DNA of 64,000 nt, taken from positions 310,001 through 374,000 of the forward strand of contig JAHLTZ010000018.1 in assembly GCA_025786725.1 (NCBI GenBank), read 5' to 3'. The DNA is from Syncephalis fuscata S228 (taxonomy: Eukaryota; Fungi; Zoopagomycota). Within the stretch, counting starts at the first letter, position 1. Every line of letters begins with the position of its first letter. Below, one piece after another: positions 8,002 through 24,910 of the stretch. A program made the position numbers and the translations under genes. The notes below the pieces were generated by a model. It was not told the DNA's origin. It made no database searches and saw only the letters and a program-made list of their open reading frames with translations.

Positions 8002-9584
8002 TATGAAAGAAAGTCACCTGTGTTCAAATAGTTCATGGTCTTCCCTTTTATGTTTGATGAGATCATTGTTGAAAACCTGATTCAATATAAATTTGATTTT
8101 ATATTATTTTGTTTCCATATCTATTGTTTAAGATGCATAGATAAGTGTAGTCTAGTAAACATAGAACACAGCTTATTGCAATTATTAATAAAACAATCAA
8201 TGTTTAATAAGATTTTATACAGCGTCGTAAGCAATTTACAAAGTGGCTGGTTAATATTATTAAGTAAATCAATAAGTCCTATTGAACAACACGTGTATTG
8301 ATATTCAATACATATAAAATATATTTCAGTAACCAATCAATAATTATACACGGATACGGATATAATGATAAATATAGATACAATGTCAATGCCAAATACA
8401 TTTAAATATCGCTTATTTCCATGCTATCCAATAAATAATATCAATGTATACAAGTATAACAGAAGACAAACGGTAAATGATATAACCAGTGGATAATATT
8501 GCTAAAATAGGCATACATTGTTTAATATACTGTTGGCTTTGAATTAAGAATTTGCAAACGCAACTCGATGCGCTAACACAATTCAAAATCCCAAATGTCA
8601 TTTTCATCAAATTAATGTCATATAATGCATTTTTACAACAGGATTATCTCTGATTATTATGTCGTATTTTATTTATCTACACTGAAGCTAGATATACAAG
8701 ACTGGTATAACCTAGCGAGCACAATCCAGTATTTTGCATTATTCTATAAACAAAGAATTAATAAAATTGATGTTCAAACCCCATGATTTGTTATCGGGAA
8801 TGTCGTTATGCAAAGGCCAATTGCTAACTGTGATACCTGCATCAGCATTTGGTAGTACCGTGTTAAAATGAATAGTCTATTTTATTAAACAATCTGTAAT
8901 GCCGAATTTAATGTATATGCAAATCAATCAATATGATTTATAGCTAAGTAATTGCAGCCAACTTATCTATAGCATAAAACACTTTTAAAAAGACGCAAAT
9001 ATACTAGATCAAAATTGATAATATACTGAAGCTATATGTTACTTTGAATAGCATACATGCAGATGTTGGGGCAAGTTTTTCGGTAAAAGCGACAGCAAAG
9101 GCGCAAAACAAAACAATAGCAAAGGCACAGTAATTCATTGCCATTGTTGTAGAATCAATAAATTTAGCTTATATTGTATGGCCTAGTTGTGTAACAGCAT
9201 GGTGAAAGCCGATATATAAACCTTTACTGTATAAATACCAGATTATTGGTGTTACCAGCTTGTCTGTTTAAATGTTAAACAAATTAAAACAAAGAGCTAG
9301 GCTGCATATCATCACGTTATCAGTGTGTTGGTATACGTGTGCCTCAAGTCATCATGTGAATGTATCGCTATTGGCTCACACTACATTTCAATGGTATAGT
9401 CCATACACTACAGCCTATTGACATTTCAGCATAACCATAGGCTTAAATAGACCACGCAATACACACAGCTAACCATTGCACCACAATTGCACTCTCTTTC
9501 TCCAAGTATTCACCACTATCTACTTTATACCAATTATATTCTATTATCTGTTTTATTTGTTTGTTTCAACAAATCAGAATCAAC

Positions 9585-10664
9585 ATAAAGCGTCCTATTG
9601 CTGTCGTCTGTACCATCGTCGTGGCTTTTGTGGCCAACATAGCCATGGCAGATGCTAAGCCAATGCTAGTTCGTCGTGGTAGGTTGCAACTACGATGCTC
9701 AATTAATTAGTTACTCAATCAAATACTTTTTGTAATACCAAACTGAATTTGATAGCCTGTAAGTGATTTTATAAATCCTTAAACATGCTAAATACATATC
9801 GCCCACTATACGTGTTTAGTAACTTATATTGATAGTTTGTAAGTAGCTCCATCTATTAATTAGTTATATAATAACCATATGCCATTCACCTTTTTGTGAT
9901 TAATAATTTGTATTAATAAAGAGTAAGCAGCGTTGTATATTAATTTAATTATATACCAACAATTTTGCATTTACTTTGCGTGCTCAATAATGTGCATTAA
10001 TAGAGCGTAAGTAACGTTTTACATTAACTAATTATATACTAAATTTATGCTGTTTACTGTGTGTACTCAATAATATGTATTAATATTTTGTAAGTGGTGG
10101 TTTAGCTTAACTAGCTATATGCTAAGATATTTCATGCACCATGTGTGCCAATGATTTGTATTAATAGCAGGTAAGTGGCGGTGTATAGTAATGGGCTATA
10201 TATTAATCATGTTTCATGCGCTGTGTTTGTTCAATAGCCTGTATTAATAGGCGGTAAATAAGATCGTATATTGATTAACTATCATTAGCTAATCCGATAT
10301 TTGTACGTTGAATGGTTTTTATTGATAGATGGTAGGTGAGACTGCATATTAAGCTACTATGTTCTAATCATAAACCATGCATTGTGCGTTTTTAGTAAGA
10401 TATTTTTATAGAATGTAAGTGGAGCTGTATGGAAATTGGATAAATGTTAATTATATATTATACATAGTATGTAGCTAGTAATTTAATGCTAACAAACAGT
10501 AAGTGATATTTCACACCATCTAATTATGTACTAATCATATACTGTTACTGAACATTTTAATGGCATTTGCCGATAGATGGTGAGATAAACTGCATAATAG
10601 TTAGCTATATACTAATTAAACGAACTTTACTGTATACATCTATACCATGAAATAACTAGCATAA
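9585..10664 (+). other. Micro-exon gene, possibly a pseudogene, for a small secreted prepro-peptide: one 94-nt signal/pro exon, eleven 3-nt exons and a terminal CA-TAA exon
   Basis: Exon 9585-9678 reads (ATA)KRPIAVVCTIVVAFVANIAMADAKPMLVRR+G. AG|NNN|GT units follow at 9756 CCT, 9836 TTT, 10004 AGC, 10168 CAG, 10251 GCG, 10329 ATG, 10412 AAT and 10577 ATG. Homologous units with non-AG acceptors lie at 9920 AGA, 10087 TTT and 10496 ACA. The final acceptor at 10659 gives G|CA TAA in frame. Confidence 0.75.
9679..10659 (+). repeat. Degenerate tandem array of 12 intron-like units, period about 78-84 nt
   Basis: Each unit begins GTAAGT, GTAGGT or similar. Most share tatattaatta..tatrctaa in the middle and end ..tgtattaatAG or ..ttgatAG. 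Intron lengths are 77, 77, 81, 81, 80, 78, 80, 75, 80, 81, 78 and 80 nt. Confidence 0.85.
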
Positions 10665-11279
10665 TTTAAAACATTAGCATGTATAATCATTAGGTTACCG
10701 TTTCCACTACGTTAGATATATATATATGGCAAGAAGCAAAATCATTTGACAAATGCCGTTTAGTCCATTCACATATCAAGCTCCAGCCAATGCTCCGGGT
10801 TATTCATATTTCAATCAATGATATTATCATATTACAAACAATTTTACAATTAGTCGTGTATATATAGCTATGTAAACTTGTAGTAACAAACATATAGTCA
10901 TATCTATGCTTATGCTTAATTTGCATCCAATTATTGAGAAGCACTAGTCAGTAAATATATTAGCATTGTATTTGTACAAATACAATTTATTATGTCGACT
11001 TGCGTGATGCAGGGCAATGTTAATGATTAAGGATGTACAAACCAAAACTATTAAAATCCAAAGTAAGCCACATTAAAATGAAACTGAGGAATTAGAATTT
11101 AGCAACAATGTTAATACTCTATCATTAATATTAACTTTAAAAACAGTCTTTTTATTAGCAACAGCCTTTCAGTAAATAATAAACATAAGATTAAACATAA
11201 CATTATCGTAAAGCTTTTAATCTTCATTACTATTTGTTGACATGCTTTTGTAAACAATTATAGCATTTCGCTTTTTTAA

Positions 11280-14200
11280 TTACGTTTCATAAGCAAGAAT
11301 AGGACGAAGCCACTTCTCTACTTCATCTACCGATACCGATTTACGCTCGGCATAGTTTTCAATCTAGTTGTAAATGAAATACATTATTAGTTGTCTATAC
11401 AAACAAGCTTATCGTTTCTACTTACTTGATCCTTTTCAATCTTGCCTACTGCAAAGTATCGTGACTCTGAGTTGGCAAAATAAAGGCCGCTAACCGATGC
11501 AGCTGGCCACATGGCAAGTGATTCAGTCAGTTGAATATCCGTTTCTTGTTCGATATTGGCAAGCTTCCACATAACACGTTTCTCTGTGTGGTCTGGCTGA
11601 CTTGGATAGCCCGGTGCTATATAAGATACCATTATTTGTTAATTAATCTACCTACTATAATTAAAATGTTATTAAATACCTGGTCGAATGCCCTATTTTT
11701 ATACAATAAAATACACGTTATTAGCAATAAATTGCATATCCATCAATATGTCACTCACCTGATATTTCACCGACAACATGGCTTCAATATCCAAATTTTC
11801 ATTCTTGTTATAGCCCCAGTATTCCTGTAAATCATTGATGGCTAATTAGTATGTTCCATCTACTAACTTAGCAAAATGGCTATTTTATTTACCCGACGCA
11901 GTTCAACATGGAGTGCCTCGGCAAATGCTTCGGCCAATCGATCGGCCAACGCTTTAACCATAATTGAGTTGTAGTCATCAAACTGCTTTTCATAGCTCGC
12001 GGCAAGTTCATCGGCTCCAAAACCAGAACTAACGGCAAAAAGACCAATATAGTCTGCAATACCGCTATCTTTGGGTGCAATAAAGTCGGATATGCACAAA
12101 TATGGATCTTGAGATTCTTTATCCTATATAGAGATGCATTAGCCATTATTTCTATGCTGTATAGCAATGTACTTTTTCCGCTTGTTGTCTAAAATATAGA
12201 ACAAATAAGTATTTATAAGCAATTAACCCTGTATGCTTATCATACCTTAATCCACAGAATTTTGCTGAAACCGTTTGACGTGTCTCATCGGTGTAAACCT
12301 GCCATTCAAGTATTTAACAATTTTATACAAAGTGGCAGTATTAGATTTATTACCTCGATATCATCACCTACGCTGTTGGCTATACAATATCATTAGATTT
12401 AATTATAATATTTAGCAACCCTTACCTGGATATAGACCAATAATACCCTTGGCTTTTAATAGCTTTTCATCTATAATACGTCTCAACAGCACTTGTGCCT
12501 CGTCGTATAGTTTCTTGGCTTCAGCACCTATTAAATCACAATTAGATTGAGCCATGTCTATAATTATTCAACAACCTACCAACATTCTCATCCTTAAATA
12601 TCTTGGGATAGCCACGATTTGGATAGCGACCTCGTAGTTGCCACACTTGGAAGAATGGATTCCAGTCGATATATTTAAGCAGTGAATTCAGATCATAATC
12701 TTTAAACACCTATAATTGAAATATCAATAGCAATTATATGTAATTTGCCATTTATCTACCTTCACACCCAAAAATGATGGCTTAACGGGCGATGATTGTG
12801 CTGCCCAGTCGATTTGTAAGCCTTGTTCGCATGCCTTTGGATATTTTAAATATTTACGATCCTTTAAAGAATCATACTAATCAAAGCAATTACTTGTTAC
12901 ACTCTCCACCATTATTAAAATCAAAAGTAGCTACTTACATGATCCTCGCGTACCTCTTCATACTCCTCTCGGATATCCTCAGCAAAGTCTTCCTTTGCTT
13001 GTTCATCAAGTAGATTTGAAACAACAACAACACTAGCCATTTAACTATTAATAACTGCAATATCGATCGTTTTTACAACGATTACCTTCTAGAAGCATCT
13101 AATACATGAATTGCCGGTACAGAGTAACGAGGAGCAATCTTCACTGCTGTATGTGTTTTACTCGTTGTAGCACCACCAATTAAAAGTGGAATTTTTACAC
13201 CTCGTCGCTCCATTTCTCGAGCCACGTGGATCATTTCATCCAATGAAGGCGTAATTAAACCAGACAAGCCAACAATGTCGGCCTGTTCTGCAATGGCCGT
13301 CTCGATAATCTTTTCAGCCGGAGTCATGACACCCAAATCAATAACCTATAATTAAGGGTTAGTTACGGTATCAATTATATTGATGTATCTATCTATTGAA
13401 CATACTTTGTAATTATTACAGCCTAGTACAACAGCTACAATATTCTTGCCAATATCTGTTTATCATCCATTGTTAATAATACGATTACAAACATACATAC
13501 ACATATATATATATTCAACTATCATACCATGAACATCTCCCTTGACCGTAGCCAATACTAATAACAATGTTTAATGATATGTTTACATTATCATATTCCA
13601 CTTACCAATTGTGCCATTGTACATCGATTGACTGGCATCAGTGTTGGCAGTCAGCTGTTGCTTTAATCGCTCTTCTTCCATAAATGGAATTAGATGAGCA
13701 ACAGCTCTAATAATTAAATGCTTGTAATTCTATACTATTAATAATTTGATCGTTTAACTTACTGCTTCATAACACGTGCACTTTTAATTACTTGAGGTAG
13801 AAACATTTTACCTGCACCAAATAGATCACCAACAATATTCATTCCGTCCATCAACGGCCCTTCAATGACATGTAATGGCCTTTCAAACTATCATTGTTGG
13901 CATGTATCAGTTTTGTTTATATAATCACTATTGTTTGATAATTACCTCTGGCGATACACGGGCTTCTTCCGTATCTTCGATAATATACTTGGTAATACCT
14001 TTAACAAGCGCATAGGACAGTCGTTTCCTTACTGGATCTTTTCGCCATTCTTCTTCGTTCTCCTTCTTCTCACCTACTTTTCCGTGTTGTTCAGCGTATT
14101 TAAGTAGTTTCTCTGTTGATTCGGGATCTTTGTTGTGAACTGCATTTTCACAAATCTCAAGCAGATCTTTGGGAATATCGTCGTAAATGGTAAGAAATCC

Positions 14201-23471: not shown

Positions 23472-23821
23472 TTTTACAGGCATAATGGGCAGGCCTAGTA
23501 ACACAAATCATGCTACCCTTGTCCACTAGAATCATAGGATACCCAATCGCCTGGCGTAAATGAATTCTAATGTAGTACAATTTAGTAGAGCATGTTTGTT
23601 CACACAATACTATTCTCGCTTCTGTTTCATCATTTTGTTTCCAATTGATTATTATTGAACATCTGTGTTGCCCATACTATCTTCATTCATACACGCACAT
23701 ATACATATACATATATATAGTGCTACGTTTATCCATTTCAAATAAATTATCATAACATCAAATCGCACTCATTACTCGCTATTTATCTATATTGCAACGA
23801 CTCTATTTAACTGCCTCCATT

Positions 23822-24910
23822 ATGTCTACCGCTAGCCGATACACTACCTGGCGTCAACGCTACCTTCGCGACGAACCAAGTCTCGGCTCAGGACAGCCGT
23901 GCCGATATGTCGCCTACAACACAGATGGCTCCAACGGTGATGCCATCACTACTAGTGAATCTTCTGGCTATGGTTTGCTAATTTCCGTTCTAAATAATGC
24001 TCGCGAAGACTTTGATGCTATTCTGCGTTTTACCGACCACTTCATGAATAGCCGTGACCTACTCGGCTGGCAGCAGAGACGTGAACAAGGTTCAGGCCGC
24101 ATACTTCCCGGTAACAACGGCGGTGAAAACTCGGCTACCGATGGCGATCTTGACTGTGTAGCTGCACTATGGATGGCCCACAAACGATGGGGCAACAACC
24201 AGTACGCCGACCGTGCACGCAGGTGGGGCAATGCCATCCTAAACCACTGTATTAATTCAGATACTGGTGCTATTGTTCTTGGCGACTGGGCCAACTTCAA
24301 TAAATGGGATGATAAGCGATGGCTTACCCGTCCATCTGACTATGTTCTCGGTCATTTAACCATGTTTTCACGCAAGCATACCGATCGAAGCGATGCCTGG
24401 AACCGTGTCATTAACGCTACCCGTTCCATCATGAATAGCCAGTACAAGCTTAATCCAAATACTGGTTTGGTTGCTGATTTCTTGAAATGGGATTCAGGTC
24501 GTAACATGTACATGCCAGCGAATGGCTTTGTTCAGGAATCATCGCACGATGGCGACTTTAACTGGAACGCATGCCGAGTTCCATGGCGTCTAGCCCAGTA
24601 CTACTTCTATACTAGGGACTCTTCTGTCTTGCCACACTTGCAAGCACTTGTCAGATTCTTTGAAGCTAGGTGCAGCAACGGCTACGTACTTGCCGGCTAC
24701 CAGCTAAACGGTCAAGGATATGTCAACTATACAAACTTGGCATTCCTTGCTCCAGCTGCTTACTGCCTCAAAATCATGAACAGCCCGTTGGCCAACACTG
24801 TCTTTGGTCAAATGGACCAAGCTTATCCTAGCGCTACTTACTACGGTGAAACTATTTCTCTCATTACTCTATTGCAAGCCGAACGAAGCTCGCTTGACTT
24901 GATGAACTAA
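23822..24910 (+). CDS. Glycoside hydrolase family 8, GH8b-type (chitosanase/licheninase-like), intronless
   Basis: Motifs TTSESSGYG (catalytic acid Glu), SATDGDLD, LGDW, TRPSD, TGLVADF, QES..DGDFNWNACRVPWR and YYGETI. First ATG at 23822. Confidence 0.9.
   Translation: MSTASRYTTWRQRYLRDEPSLGSGQPCRYVAYNTDGSNGDAITTSESSGYGLLISVLNNAREDFDAILRFTDHFMNSRDLLGWQQRREQGSGRILPGNNGGENSATDGDLDCVAALWMAHKRWGNNQYADRARRWGNAILNHCINSDTGAIVLGDWANFNKWDDKRWLTRPSDYVLGHLTMFSRKHTDRSDAWNRVINATRSIMNSQYKLNPNTGLVADFLKWDSGRNMYMPANGFVQESSHDGDFNWNACRVPWRLAQYYFYTRDSSVLPHLQALVRFFEARCSNGYVLAGYQLNGQGYVNYTNLAFLAPAAYCLKIMNSPLANTVFGQMDQAYPSATYYGETISLITLLQAERSSLDLMN

What the first reader, a model, noticed from the sequence alone, without database searches (positions are those of the whole stretch)
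9585..10664. Hidden micro-exon gene: a secreted peptide encoded by a train of eleven 3-nt exons
Seen in sequence: an exon encoding a basic-hydrophobic signal peptide plus a pro-region ending in dibasic LVRR stops in phase 1 at a GTAGGT donor (9679). Twelve ~80-nt introns follow, each separated from the next by exactly 3 nt: CCT, TTT, AGA, AGC, TTT, CAG, GCG, ATG, AAT, ACA, ATG. Eight of the eleven have a perfect TAG|NNN|GT context. The last acceptor (10659) supplies CA-TAA, which closes the frame exactly. Joining everything gives prepro-RR-A-F-*-K-L-S-G-D-E-Y-N-A-stop. Established: dibasic RR/KR sites are Kex2 processing sites, and Schistosoma micro-exon genes (MEGs) use a signal exon plus symmetric tiny exons to diversify secreted proteins. 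Inference: this is a fungal MEG-like system at the minimal frame-preserving exon size, possibly making peptide effectors or signals in a parasitic fungus. I do not know of a description of it, and gene finders would miss it.
Basis: partly seen in the sequence, partly recalled or inferred. Interest (0 to 1): 0.95.

Follow-up and report, generated by a model that had tools for sequence, protein, structure and literature searches.

The report
One-codon-per-exon fungal peptide genes
A fungus that parasitises other fungi carries roughly 150-200 genes for small secreted peptides whose mature part is written three DNA letters at a time, each triplet cut off from the next by an 80-letter intron; gene finders miss almost all of them, and the copy in this window is a broken member of that family.

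Summary
The array is real and belongs to a large unannotated gene family of Syncephalis fuscata (Zoopagomycota mycoparasite). The genome has 177 signal-exon/donor sites and 2,411 triple YAG|NNN|GTRAG units (control 0); trains reach about 80 exons. Three independent lines show that the triplets are joined: junction codons avoid stops (1 seen, 14.2±2.9 expected) and favour Cys; five complete models close on a stop with even Cys counts; and intronless retrocopies beginning at the inferred transcription start carry the joined sequence (14 consecutive 3-nt exons match 35/42 nt, mismatches mostly at wobble). This window's copy is a decayed member: ATA start, stop at the third mature codon, three dead acceptors, altered poly(A) signal, low RNA depth. 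No spliced micro-exon junction was seen directly in RNA. Similar 3-nt trains lie upstream of kinases in Glomeraceae. I found no paper describing either. Other first readers of this scan noted the same family elsewhere in this genome (unchecked).

The parts
9325..9449 (+). Promoter region shared by array genes: ATTGG (CCAAT-like) box at 9370-9374, TATA-like TAAATA at 9444-9449
   Evidence: Aligned with eight array paralogues; absent from both intronless copies; function inferred
9480..9584 (+). 5' UTR; 9480 is the position homologous to where two independent intronless copies begin (inferred transcription start)
   Evidence: locus-identical RNA contig 9450-9637 at depth 10.9
9585..9678 (+). Exon 1: signal peptide + short pro-region ending in RR, phase 1; start codon position reads ATA (broken)
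   Evidence: 177 such exon/donor sites in genome
9679..10659 (+). Train of twelve mutually homologous 75-81 nt introns separated by 3-nt exons
   Evidence: unit consensus
9756..9758 (+). 3-nt exon 1 of 11 (TAG acceptor)
9836..9838 (+). 3-nt exon 2 (TAG acceptor); its last base plus the next usable exon gives the premature stop
9920..9922 (+). 3-nt exon 3, acceptor broken (TAA)
10004..10006 (+). 3-nt exon 4 (TAG acceptor)
10087..10089 (+). 3-nt exon 5, acceptor broken (TAT)
10168..10170 (+). 3-nt exon 6 (TAG acceptor)
10251..10253 (+). 3-nt exon 7 (TAG acceptor)
10329..10331 (+). 3-nt exon 8 (TAG acceptor)
10412..10414 (+). 3-nt exon 9 (TAG acceptor)
10496..10498 (+). 3-nt exon 10, acceptor broken (CAA)
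10577..10579 (+). 3-nt exon 11 (TAG acceptor)
10660..10905 (+). Terminal exon: stop at 10662-10664, then the family's conserved ~240-nt 3' UTR; poly(A) signal altered (AACAAA, 10885-10890)
   Evidence: Alignment with six array tails and two intronless copies

Best explanation
The locus is a decayed member of a family of about 150-200 Syncephalis fuscata genes for small secreted peptides (signal peptide, pro-piece, Kex2-type RR site, then a variable mature peptide, often with 6 or 8 Cys). In intact members the mature peptide is encoded by 13 to about 80 consecutive 3-nt exons, each supplying the last two bases of one codon and the first base of the next, separated by ~78-nt introns that are copies of one another. 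Shown: the architecture, its scale, selection on the in-order joined frame, and intronless copies that hold the joined sequence and start at the inferred transcription start. Inferred: all exons are included constitutively, by intron definition and one intron at a time; the unit (intron + triplet) multiplies, is lost or is swapped by unequal recombination between the homologous introns without ever shifting the frame, so peptides are lengthened and rewritten a codon at a time; mRNAs are now and then reverse-transcribed into intronless retrogenes; the peptides act on the host fungus or on competitors; copies such as this one die (birth-and-death).
For: Family size. Perfect trains, e.g. 49 of 49 units in L025. 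Non-redundant set of 375 junction codons: stops 1 vs 14.2±2.9, Cys 33 vs 17.8±3.0 in 10,000 within-train shuffles; the phase-2 control frame shows no depletion. Five complete models close on a stop at or just before the terminal exon with 8, 6, 6, 6 and 2 Cys. Intronless L042 matches 14 consecutive 3-nt exons of L040 at 35/42 nt (z=10 against order shuffles), 5 of 7 differences at the wobble position; intronless P0014 begins with the peptide that L027 builds from 3+3+15-nt exons. Two unrelated intronless copies lose similarity at the same point, 107 nt before ATG and ~30 nt after the TATA-like box, and have a short A-run after AATAAA. Splice signals differ at 1.3% between close paralogues against 9.0% for intron interiors. 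Same-triplet units have more alike flanks in 6 of 12 arrays. RNA of the organism shows 10-nt and 16-nt exons spliced in the neighbouring methionine synthase gene and very deep family exon-1 signal. Decay of this copy: 3 of 11 broken acceptors against 5 of 498 elsewhere, ATA unedited in the locus-identical RNA contig.
Against: No RNA record shown to me spans two 3-nt exons; the only loose end after exon 1 most likely comes from an intronless copy on contig C268, so the high exon-1 depth may be largely from retrocopies. RNA contigs resembling intron units at depth ~300 show that unspliced or partly spliced transcripts are common. Only 20 arrays were read at length; many loci come as near-identical pairs (haplotigs or recent duplicates), so gene numbers are upper bounds. 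The A-runs are only about 6 nt and no target-site duplication was found. No peptide or functional evidence.
Confidence: 0.85

Rival explanations
1. MEG-type system: triplets are included or skipped in many combinations so that one gene makes a library of peptides; this locus could then still be active through skipping.
For: All exons are multiples of three and phase 1, so skipping keeps the frame; Schistosoma MEGs do this (PMC4350168).
Against: Skip-one and skip-two junctions contain stops at the chance rate; Cys spacing and even Cys counts need the full order; the retrocopy holds all 14 compared exons in order; in this locus the path through intact exons still stops at the third mature codon.
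Confidence: 0.08
2. Intron gain: intronless genes are ancestral and an introner-like element, or reverse splicing, has inserted itself after every third base; arrays may be poorly spliced relics while intronless copies do the work.
For: Introns are homologous (about 60% identity between neighbours); RNA seen so far traces to intronless copies.
Against: Arrays keep the shared promoter while intronless copies have unrelated upstream DNA from the inferred start site on; strict 3-nt spacing and same-triplet/same-flank pattern fit tandem duplication; arrays outnumber intronless starts about 4 to 1 and show purifying selection on splice sites.
Confidence: 0.04
3. Old minisatellite lying in an intron of a signal-peptide gene; the splice-like motifs are just the repeat consensus.
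For: The units are tandem repeats; no direct junction read.
Against: A repeat cannot explain coupling between triplets 80 nt apart (stop avoidance, Cys excess, wobble-like T/C bias at position 2), nor an intronless copy that spells the triplets in order.
Confidence: 0.02
4. This copy is functional because A-to-I editing restores the start codon and acceptors.
Against: The locus-identical RNA contig covers 9587 with no other letter; the TAT acceptor and the AACAAA signal are not A-for-G changes; G-to-A is the commonest kind of decay.
Confidence: 0.01

Closest known systems
Schistosoma micro-exon genes (MEGs)
   Same: Parasite; secreted products with a signal peptide; most of the coding region made of very small symmetric exons; hard to annotate; fast-evolving multigene family (bioRxiv 2023.06.21.545858; PMC4350168).
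   Different: MEGs: 35 genes, 10-20 exons mostly 15 nt (range 3/6-81), introns 0.1-5 kb, platyhelminth-restricted, diversified by alternative splicing. Here: ~150-200 loci, up to ~80 exons nearly all 3 nt, 75-83 nt introns that are tandem copies of each other, no tolerance of skipping, a Kex2-type site, intronless retrocopies; no sequence relationship found.
Scattered fungal microexons (Coprinopsis cinerea long-read annotation)
   Same: Shows that fungi splice exons of 1-3 nt between short introns (PMC12230235).
   Different: 27 three-nucleotide exons in 26 genes in the whole genome, essentially one per gene; here more than 2,400 in trains, up to 63 in an unbroken strict run.
Fungal small secreted cysteine-rich proteins / Kex2-processed prepropeptides; disulfide-stapled helical hairpins such as plant alpha-hairpinins (from own knowledge)
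   Same: Conserved signal and pro-region, dibasic site, hypervariable mature part with paired Cys (CX3C motifs); low-confidence model of one mature peptide is a two-helix hairpin (pLDDT 63); one member carries an SVWC domain (PF15430, E 4.7e-7).
   Different: No Pfam, Atlas or fold match for the others; mature peptides are of several unrelated types (Cys-rich, Ser/Gly-rich, Gln/Asn-rich) behind one shared leader; gene structure has no counterpart.
Processed retrogenes
   Same: Intronless copies start at the inferred transcription start, keep both UTRs, end near a short A-run, and have foreign upstream DNA.
   Different: A-runs short, no target-site duplication found; several are open, annotated and tandemly duplicated (L041).

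Membership tests
Schistosoma MEG | Signal peptide, secreted product | tested here: met
   Basic-hydrophobic leader conserved in all paralogues; read by eye, no SignalP available
Schistosoma MEG | Most of the coding region in very small symmetric exons | tested here: met
Schistosoma MEG | Long introns (0.1-5 kb), exons mostly 15 nt | tested here: not met
   Introns mean 78 nt, exons 3 nt
Schistosoma MEG | Protein variety made by exon skipping | tested here: not met
   Indirect: skip junctions do not avoid stops; direct isoform data not available
Schistosoma MEG | Sequence homology / platyhelminth distribution | tested here: not met
   Exon-1 profile finds only S. fuscata proteins among 1.84 billion representatives
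Protein-coding gene with spliced 3-nt exons | Selection on the joined reading frame | tested here: met
Protein-coding gene with spliced 3-nt exons | Joined sequence exists as a contiguous copy | tested here: met
   As DNA: intronless paralogue L042 vs L040; P0014 vs L027
Protein-coding gene with spliced 3-nt exons | RNA reads across micro-exon junctions | tested here: inconclusive
   One run, contigs only; none shown; loose end traced to an intronless copy
Processed retrogene (intronless copies) | 5' boundary at transcription start, no introns, poly(A) remnant, target-site duplication | tested here: inconclusive
   First two met, A-run only ~6 nt, no duplication found
Kex2-processed secreted peptide | Cleavage after the dibasic site, peptide found outside the cell | not testable with these tools
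   RR invariant in 11 aligned leaders; processing is inferred from established knowledge of Kex2
Functional gene (this window's copy) | ATG start, intact splice sites, open frame | tested here: not met
   ATA, three broken acceptors, stop at third mature codon

The most novel reading that the evidence does not exclude
One-codon-per-exon trains are a distinct DNA-level diversification device: homologous 80-nt introns serve as recombination handles that add, delete and swap single codon-equivalents without frameshift, with reverse transcription fixing successful products as intronless retrogenes; the device arose at least twice in early-diverging fungi (Syncephalis secreted peptides; N-termini of Glomeraceae tyrosine-kinase-like kinases) and hides a sizeable part of their proteomes from all current annotation.
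Probability: 0.45. Interest if true: 0.95.

Novelty: new variant of a known kind. Interest (0 to 1): 0.88.

Why it matters
It sets what looks like the extreme of exon-intron structure: genes whose variable part is 96% intron and whose spliceosome must join dozens of 3-nt exons in order. That gives a natural test bed for how adjacent splice sites 3 nt apart are handled (order of intron removal, fidelity over 50-80 steps). It uncovers what is probably the largest secreted-peptide family of a mycoparasite, almost wholly absent from the public annotation (about 19 models against 177 + 43 sites), and so candidate effectors or antifungal peptides. The same layout upstream of kinases in arbuscular mycorrhizal fungi suggests that aligners and gene finders have been blind to it across early-diverging fungi.

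Tried and rejected
RNA loose end after exon 1 as a splice junction: three split patterns found nothing, a contiguous match exists on C268, so it is not counted as evidence. Joined (spliced) models were not sent to any database search; searches used exon 1 by reference and stored protein ids, and joined frames were computed only inside scripts for statistics. Pfam, Atlas and fold searches of mature peptides gave nothing beyond one SVWC domain. One 21-kb sample of S. plumigaleata held no train (too small to mean anything). The 72-nt constant-triplet hits in metagenomes and bacterial genomes (L044, L050, L054, L063, L065, L070-L081) are cyanobacterial repeat-spacer arrays, most likely CRISPR, and were set aside. 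The raw excess of triplet over intron divergence (35-46% vs 9%) is inflated by mispaired units; with tightly matched flanks it is 11 of 99 sites, suggestive only. Ten literature searches found no description.

Full report
Observation. The sequence at 9585-10664 is as described: a 94-nt exon for a basic-hydrophobic leader ending in RR, a donor at 9679, twelve introns of 75-81 nt, eleven triplets between them, eight with a TAG acceptor, and a last acceptor followed by CA-TAA.

Organism. Neighbouring genes hit Syncephalis species best and database proteins that begin with the exon-1 peptide are all Syncephalis fuscata models, one of them on a contig of exactly this contig's length. Syncephalis is a haustorial parasite of Mucorales (own knowledge; Zoopagomycotina are described as mycoparasites and parasites or predators of amoebae and rotifers in PMC9391592).

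Family. Exon 1 has at least 40 scored and 144 candidate relatives in the 29.4-Mb genome. A pattern for its end plus donor finds 177 sites (control 1); 43 more lack the first intron. Three YAG|NNN|GTRAG units in a row occur 2,411 times (control 0). Every one of the 20 loci read at length carries a train; L025 has 49 perfect units, L022 about 80. A few exons are 6, 9, 12 or 15 nt. Introns average 78 nt, have near-invariant GTAAGT and TAATAG ends and about 60% identity between neighbours. Many loci come in near-identical pairs, so true gene number is lower than site number. Only about 19 database models carry the leader, and those checked in the mature part are intronless copies; others look like wrong ab initio models.

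Are the triplets exons? First, selection on the join. With phase-1 introns each codon is the last base of one triplet plus the first two of the next. In a non-redundant set of 375 such codons there is 1 stop against 14.2±2.9 in within-train shuffles and 33 Cys against 17.8±3.0 (full set). The other frame shows no depletion, and triplet position 2, the wobble base, is 78% T/C. Second, closure: five trains followed to the end stop at or just before the terminal exon with 8, 6, 6, 6 and 2 Cys, like the even counts of most intronless members. Third, fossil mRNA: the intronless copy L042 matches 14 consecutive 3-nt exons of L040 at 35 of 42 nt (z = 10 against order shuffles), five of the seven differences at the wobble position, all four Cys kept; intronless P0014 opens with the peptide that L027 builds from exons of 3, 3 and 15 nt. 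Array genes share 280-700 nt of upstream sequence with a TATA-like box; two unrelated intronless copies share it only from 107 nt before ATG, about 30 nt after that box, and have a short A-run after AATAAA, as expected of reverse-transcribed mRNA.

RNA. The single run on offer (contigs only) is from this organism: the neighbouring methionine synthase gene is spliced with no mismatch, including exons of 10 and 16 nt. Family exon 1 is covered at summed depth about 25,000 against 381 for that gene, but the one loose end after exon 1 most likely comes from an intronless copy, and intron-like contigs at depth about 300 show unspliced transcripts. So direct junction evidence is still missing. This locus itself has one identical contig at depth 10.9, with the ATA unedited.

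How variety is made. Stops are avoided only between neighbouring exons, not between exons two or three apart (1 vs 14.2; 15 vs 13.4; 13 vs 12.6), which argues for constitutive inclusion and against MEG-type skipping. Units with the same triplet have more alike flanks in 6 of 12 arrays, close paralogues differ in unit number and order, and triplets change faster than their flanks (inflated by mispairing; 11 of 99 sites with tight flanks). I infer duplication, loss and exchange of intron+triplet units by recombination in the homologous introns, frame-safe by construction, behind a fixed leader, with transposon-like insertions absorbed by the introns (L002, L023, L028).

This copy. ATA start, a stop at the third mature codon whether or not the broken exons are used, 3 of 11 dead acceptors against 5 of 498 in other arrays, an altered poly(A) signal and low RNA depth mark it as a pseudogene. 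A near-identical copy on C52 (6 differences in 2,016 nt) also has an insertion in intron 10.

Second lineage. The two-unit pattern found very AT-rich soil metagenome contigs with 3-nt trains at 90-100 nt period; phase 1 has 1 stop against 5.0±1.7 (p = 0.013) and runs in frame into a tyrosine-kinase-like kinase exon whose best named relative is from Funneliformis geosporum. That species' assembly shows the same unannotated train upstream of the kinase model. No sequence relationship with the Syncephalis family is claimed.

Comparison with what is known. Schistosoma MEGs share the secreted, symmetric-micro-exon plan but have 10-20 exons of mostly 15 nt, introns up to 5 kb and diversify by alternative splicing; this family fails three of five membership tests and is not a MEG, though it resembles one. 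Long-read annotation of Coprinopsis lists 27 three-nucleotide exons in 26 genes. Ten paper searches found no account of trains of 3-nt exons in any fungus; the library lacks most subscription journals. Four other first-reader notes of this scan describe the same family elsewhere in this genome; they are not independent support.

Limits of method.

Verdict. Interest 0.88.

Noticed in passing
L045, L047, L057-L061, L064, L066 (metagenome contigs WNFZ01/WNGA01/Ga0137367) and L068:1-1980 (Funneliformis geosporum GCA_946475005.1): Trains of YAG|NNN|GT units at 90-100 nt period running in phase 1 into tyrosine-kinase-like kinase exons of Glomeraceae; they would add an Asp/Tyr/Asn-rich N-terminus that the annotation lacks.
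   Followed up: partly
L041:165-1650 (G000:C212), L042, L043; G000:C1:523631-523882; C268:120100: Intronless family copies, some tandemly duplicated with a 1,273-nt period, each with its own TATA-like box just upstream of the inferred start; probably supply much of the family's RNA.
   Followed up: partly
window 11148-12600 (minus strand): B12-dependent methionine synthase 3' region with RNA-confirmed introns of 46-68 nt and exons of 10 and 16 nt.
   Followed up: partly
L002 from about 2100; L023 intron 2; L028 after unit 21; L021 at about 725: Insertions (LTR-like or tRNA/SINE-like by eye) inside the trains' introns.
   Followed up: no
P0028 (same contig as the window, outside it): Family leader fused to an SVWC domain (PF15430, E 4.7e-7), a domain known mainly from arthropods.
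   Followed up: no
G000:C2:225393 and C2:244785: Exon-1 ends with no first intron that are followed within about 600 nt by trains: possible partial intron loss by recombination with cDNA.
   Followed up: no
window 23792-24910: Intronless GH8 glycoside hydrolase (chitosanase-like) with paralogues in other Syncephalis species.
   Followed up: partly
L044, L050, L054, L063, L065, L070-L081: Cyanobacterial 72-nt repeat-spacer arrays (likely CRISPR) whose repeat happens to contain the acceptor-triplet-donor pattern; unrelated false positives.
   Followed up: partly
introns of the trains, about 44-45 and 17 nt before the acceptor: Two peaks of branch-point-like YTRAY (145 and 115 of 375 introns); which is used is unknown.
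   Followed up: partly
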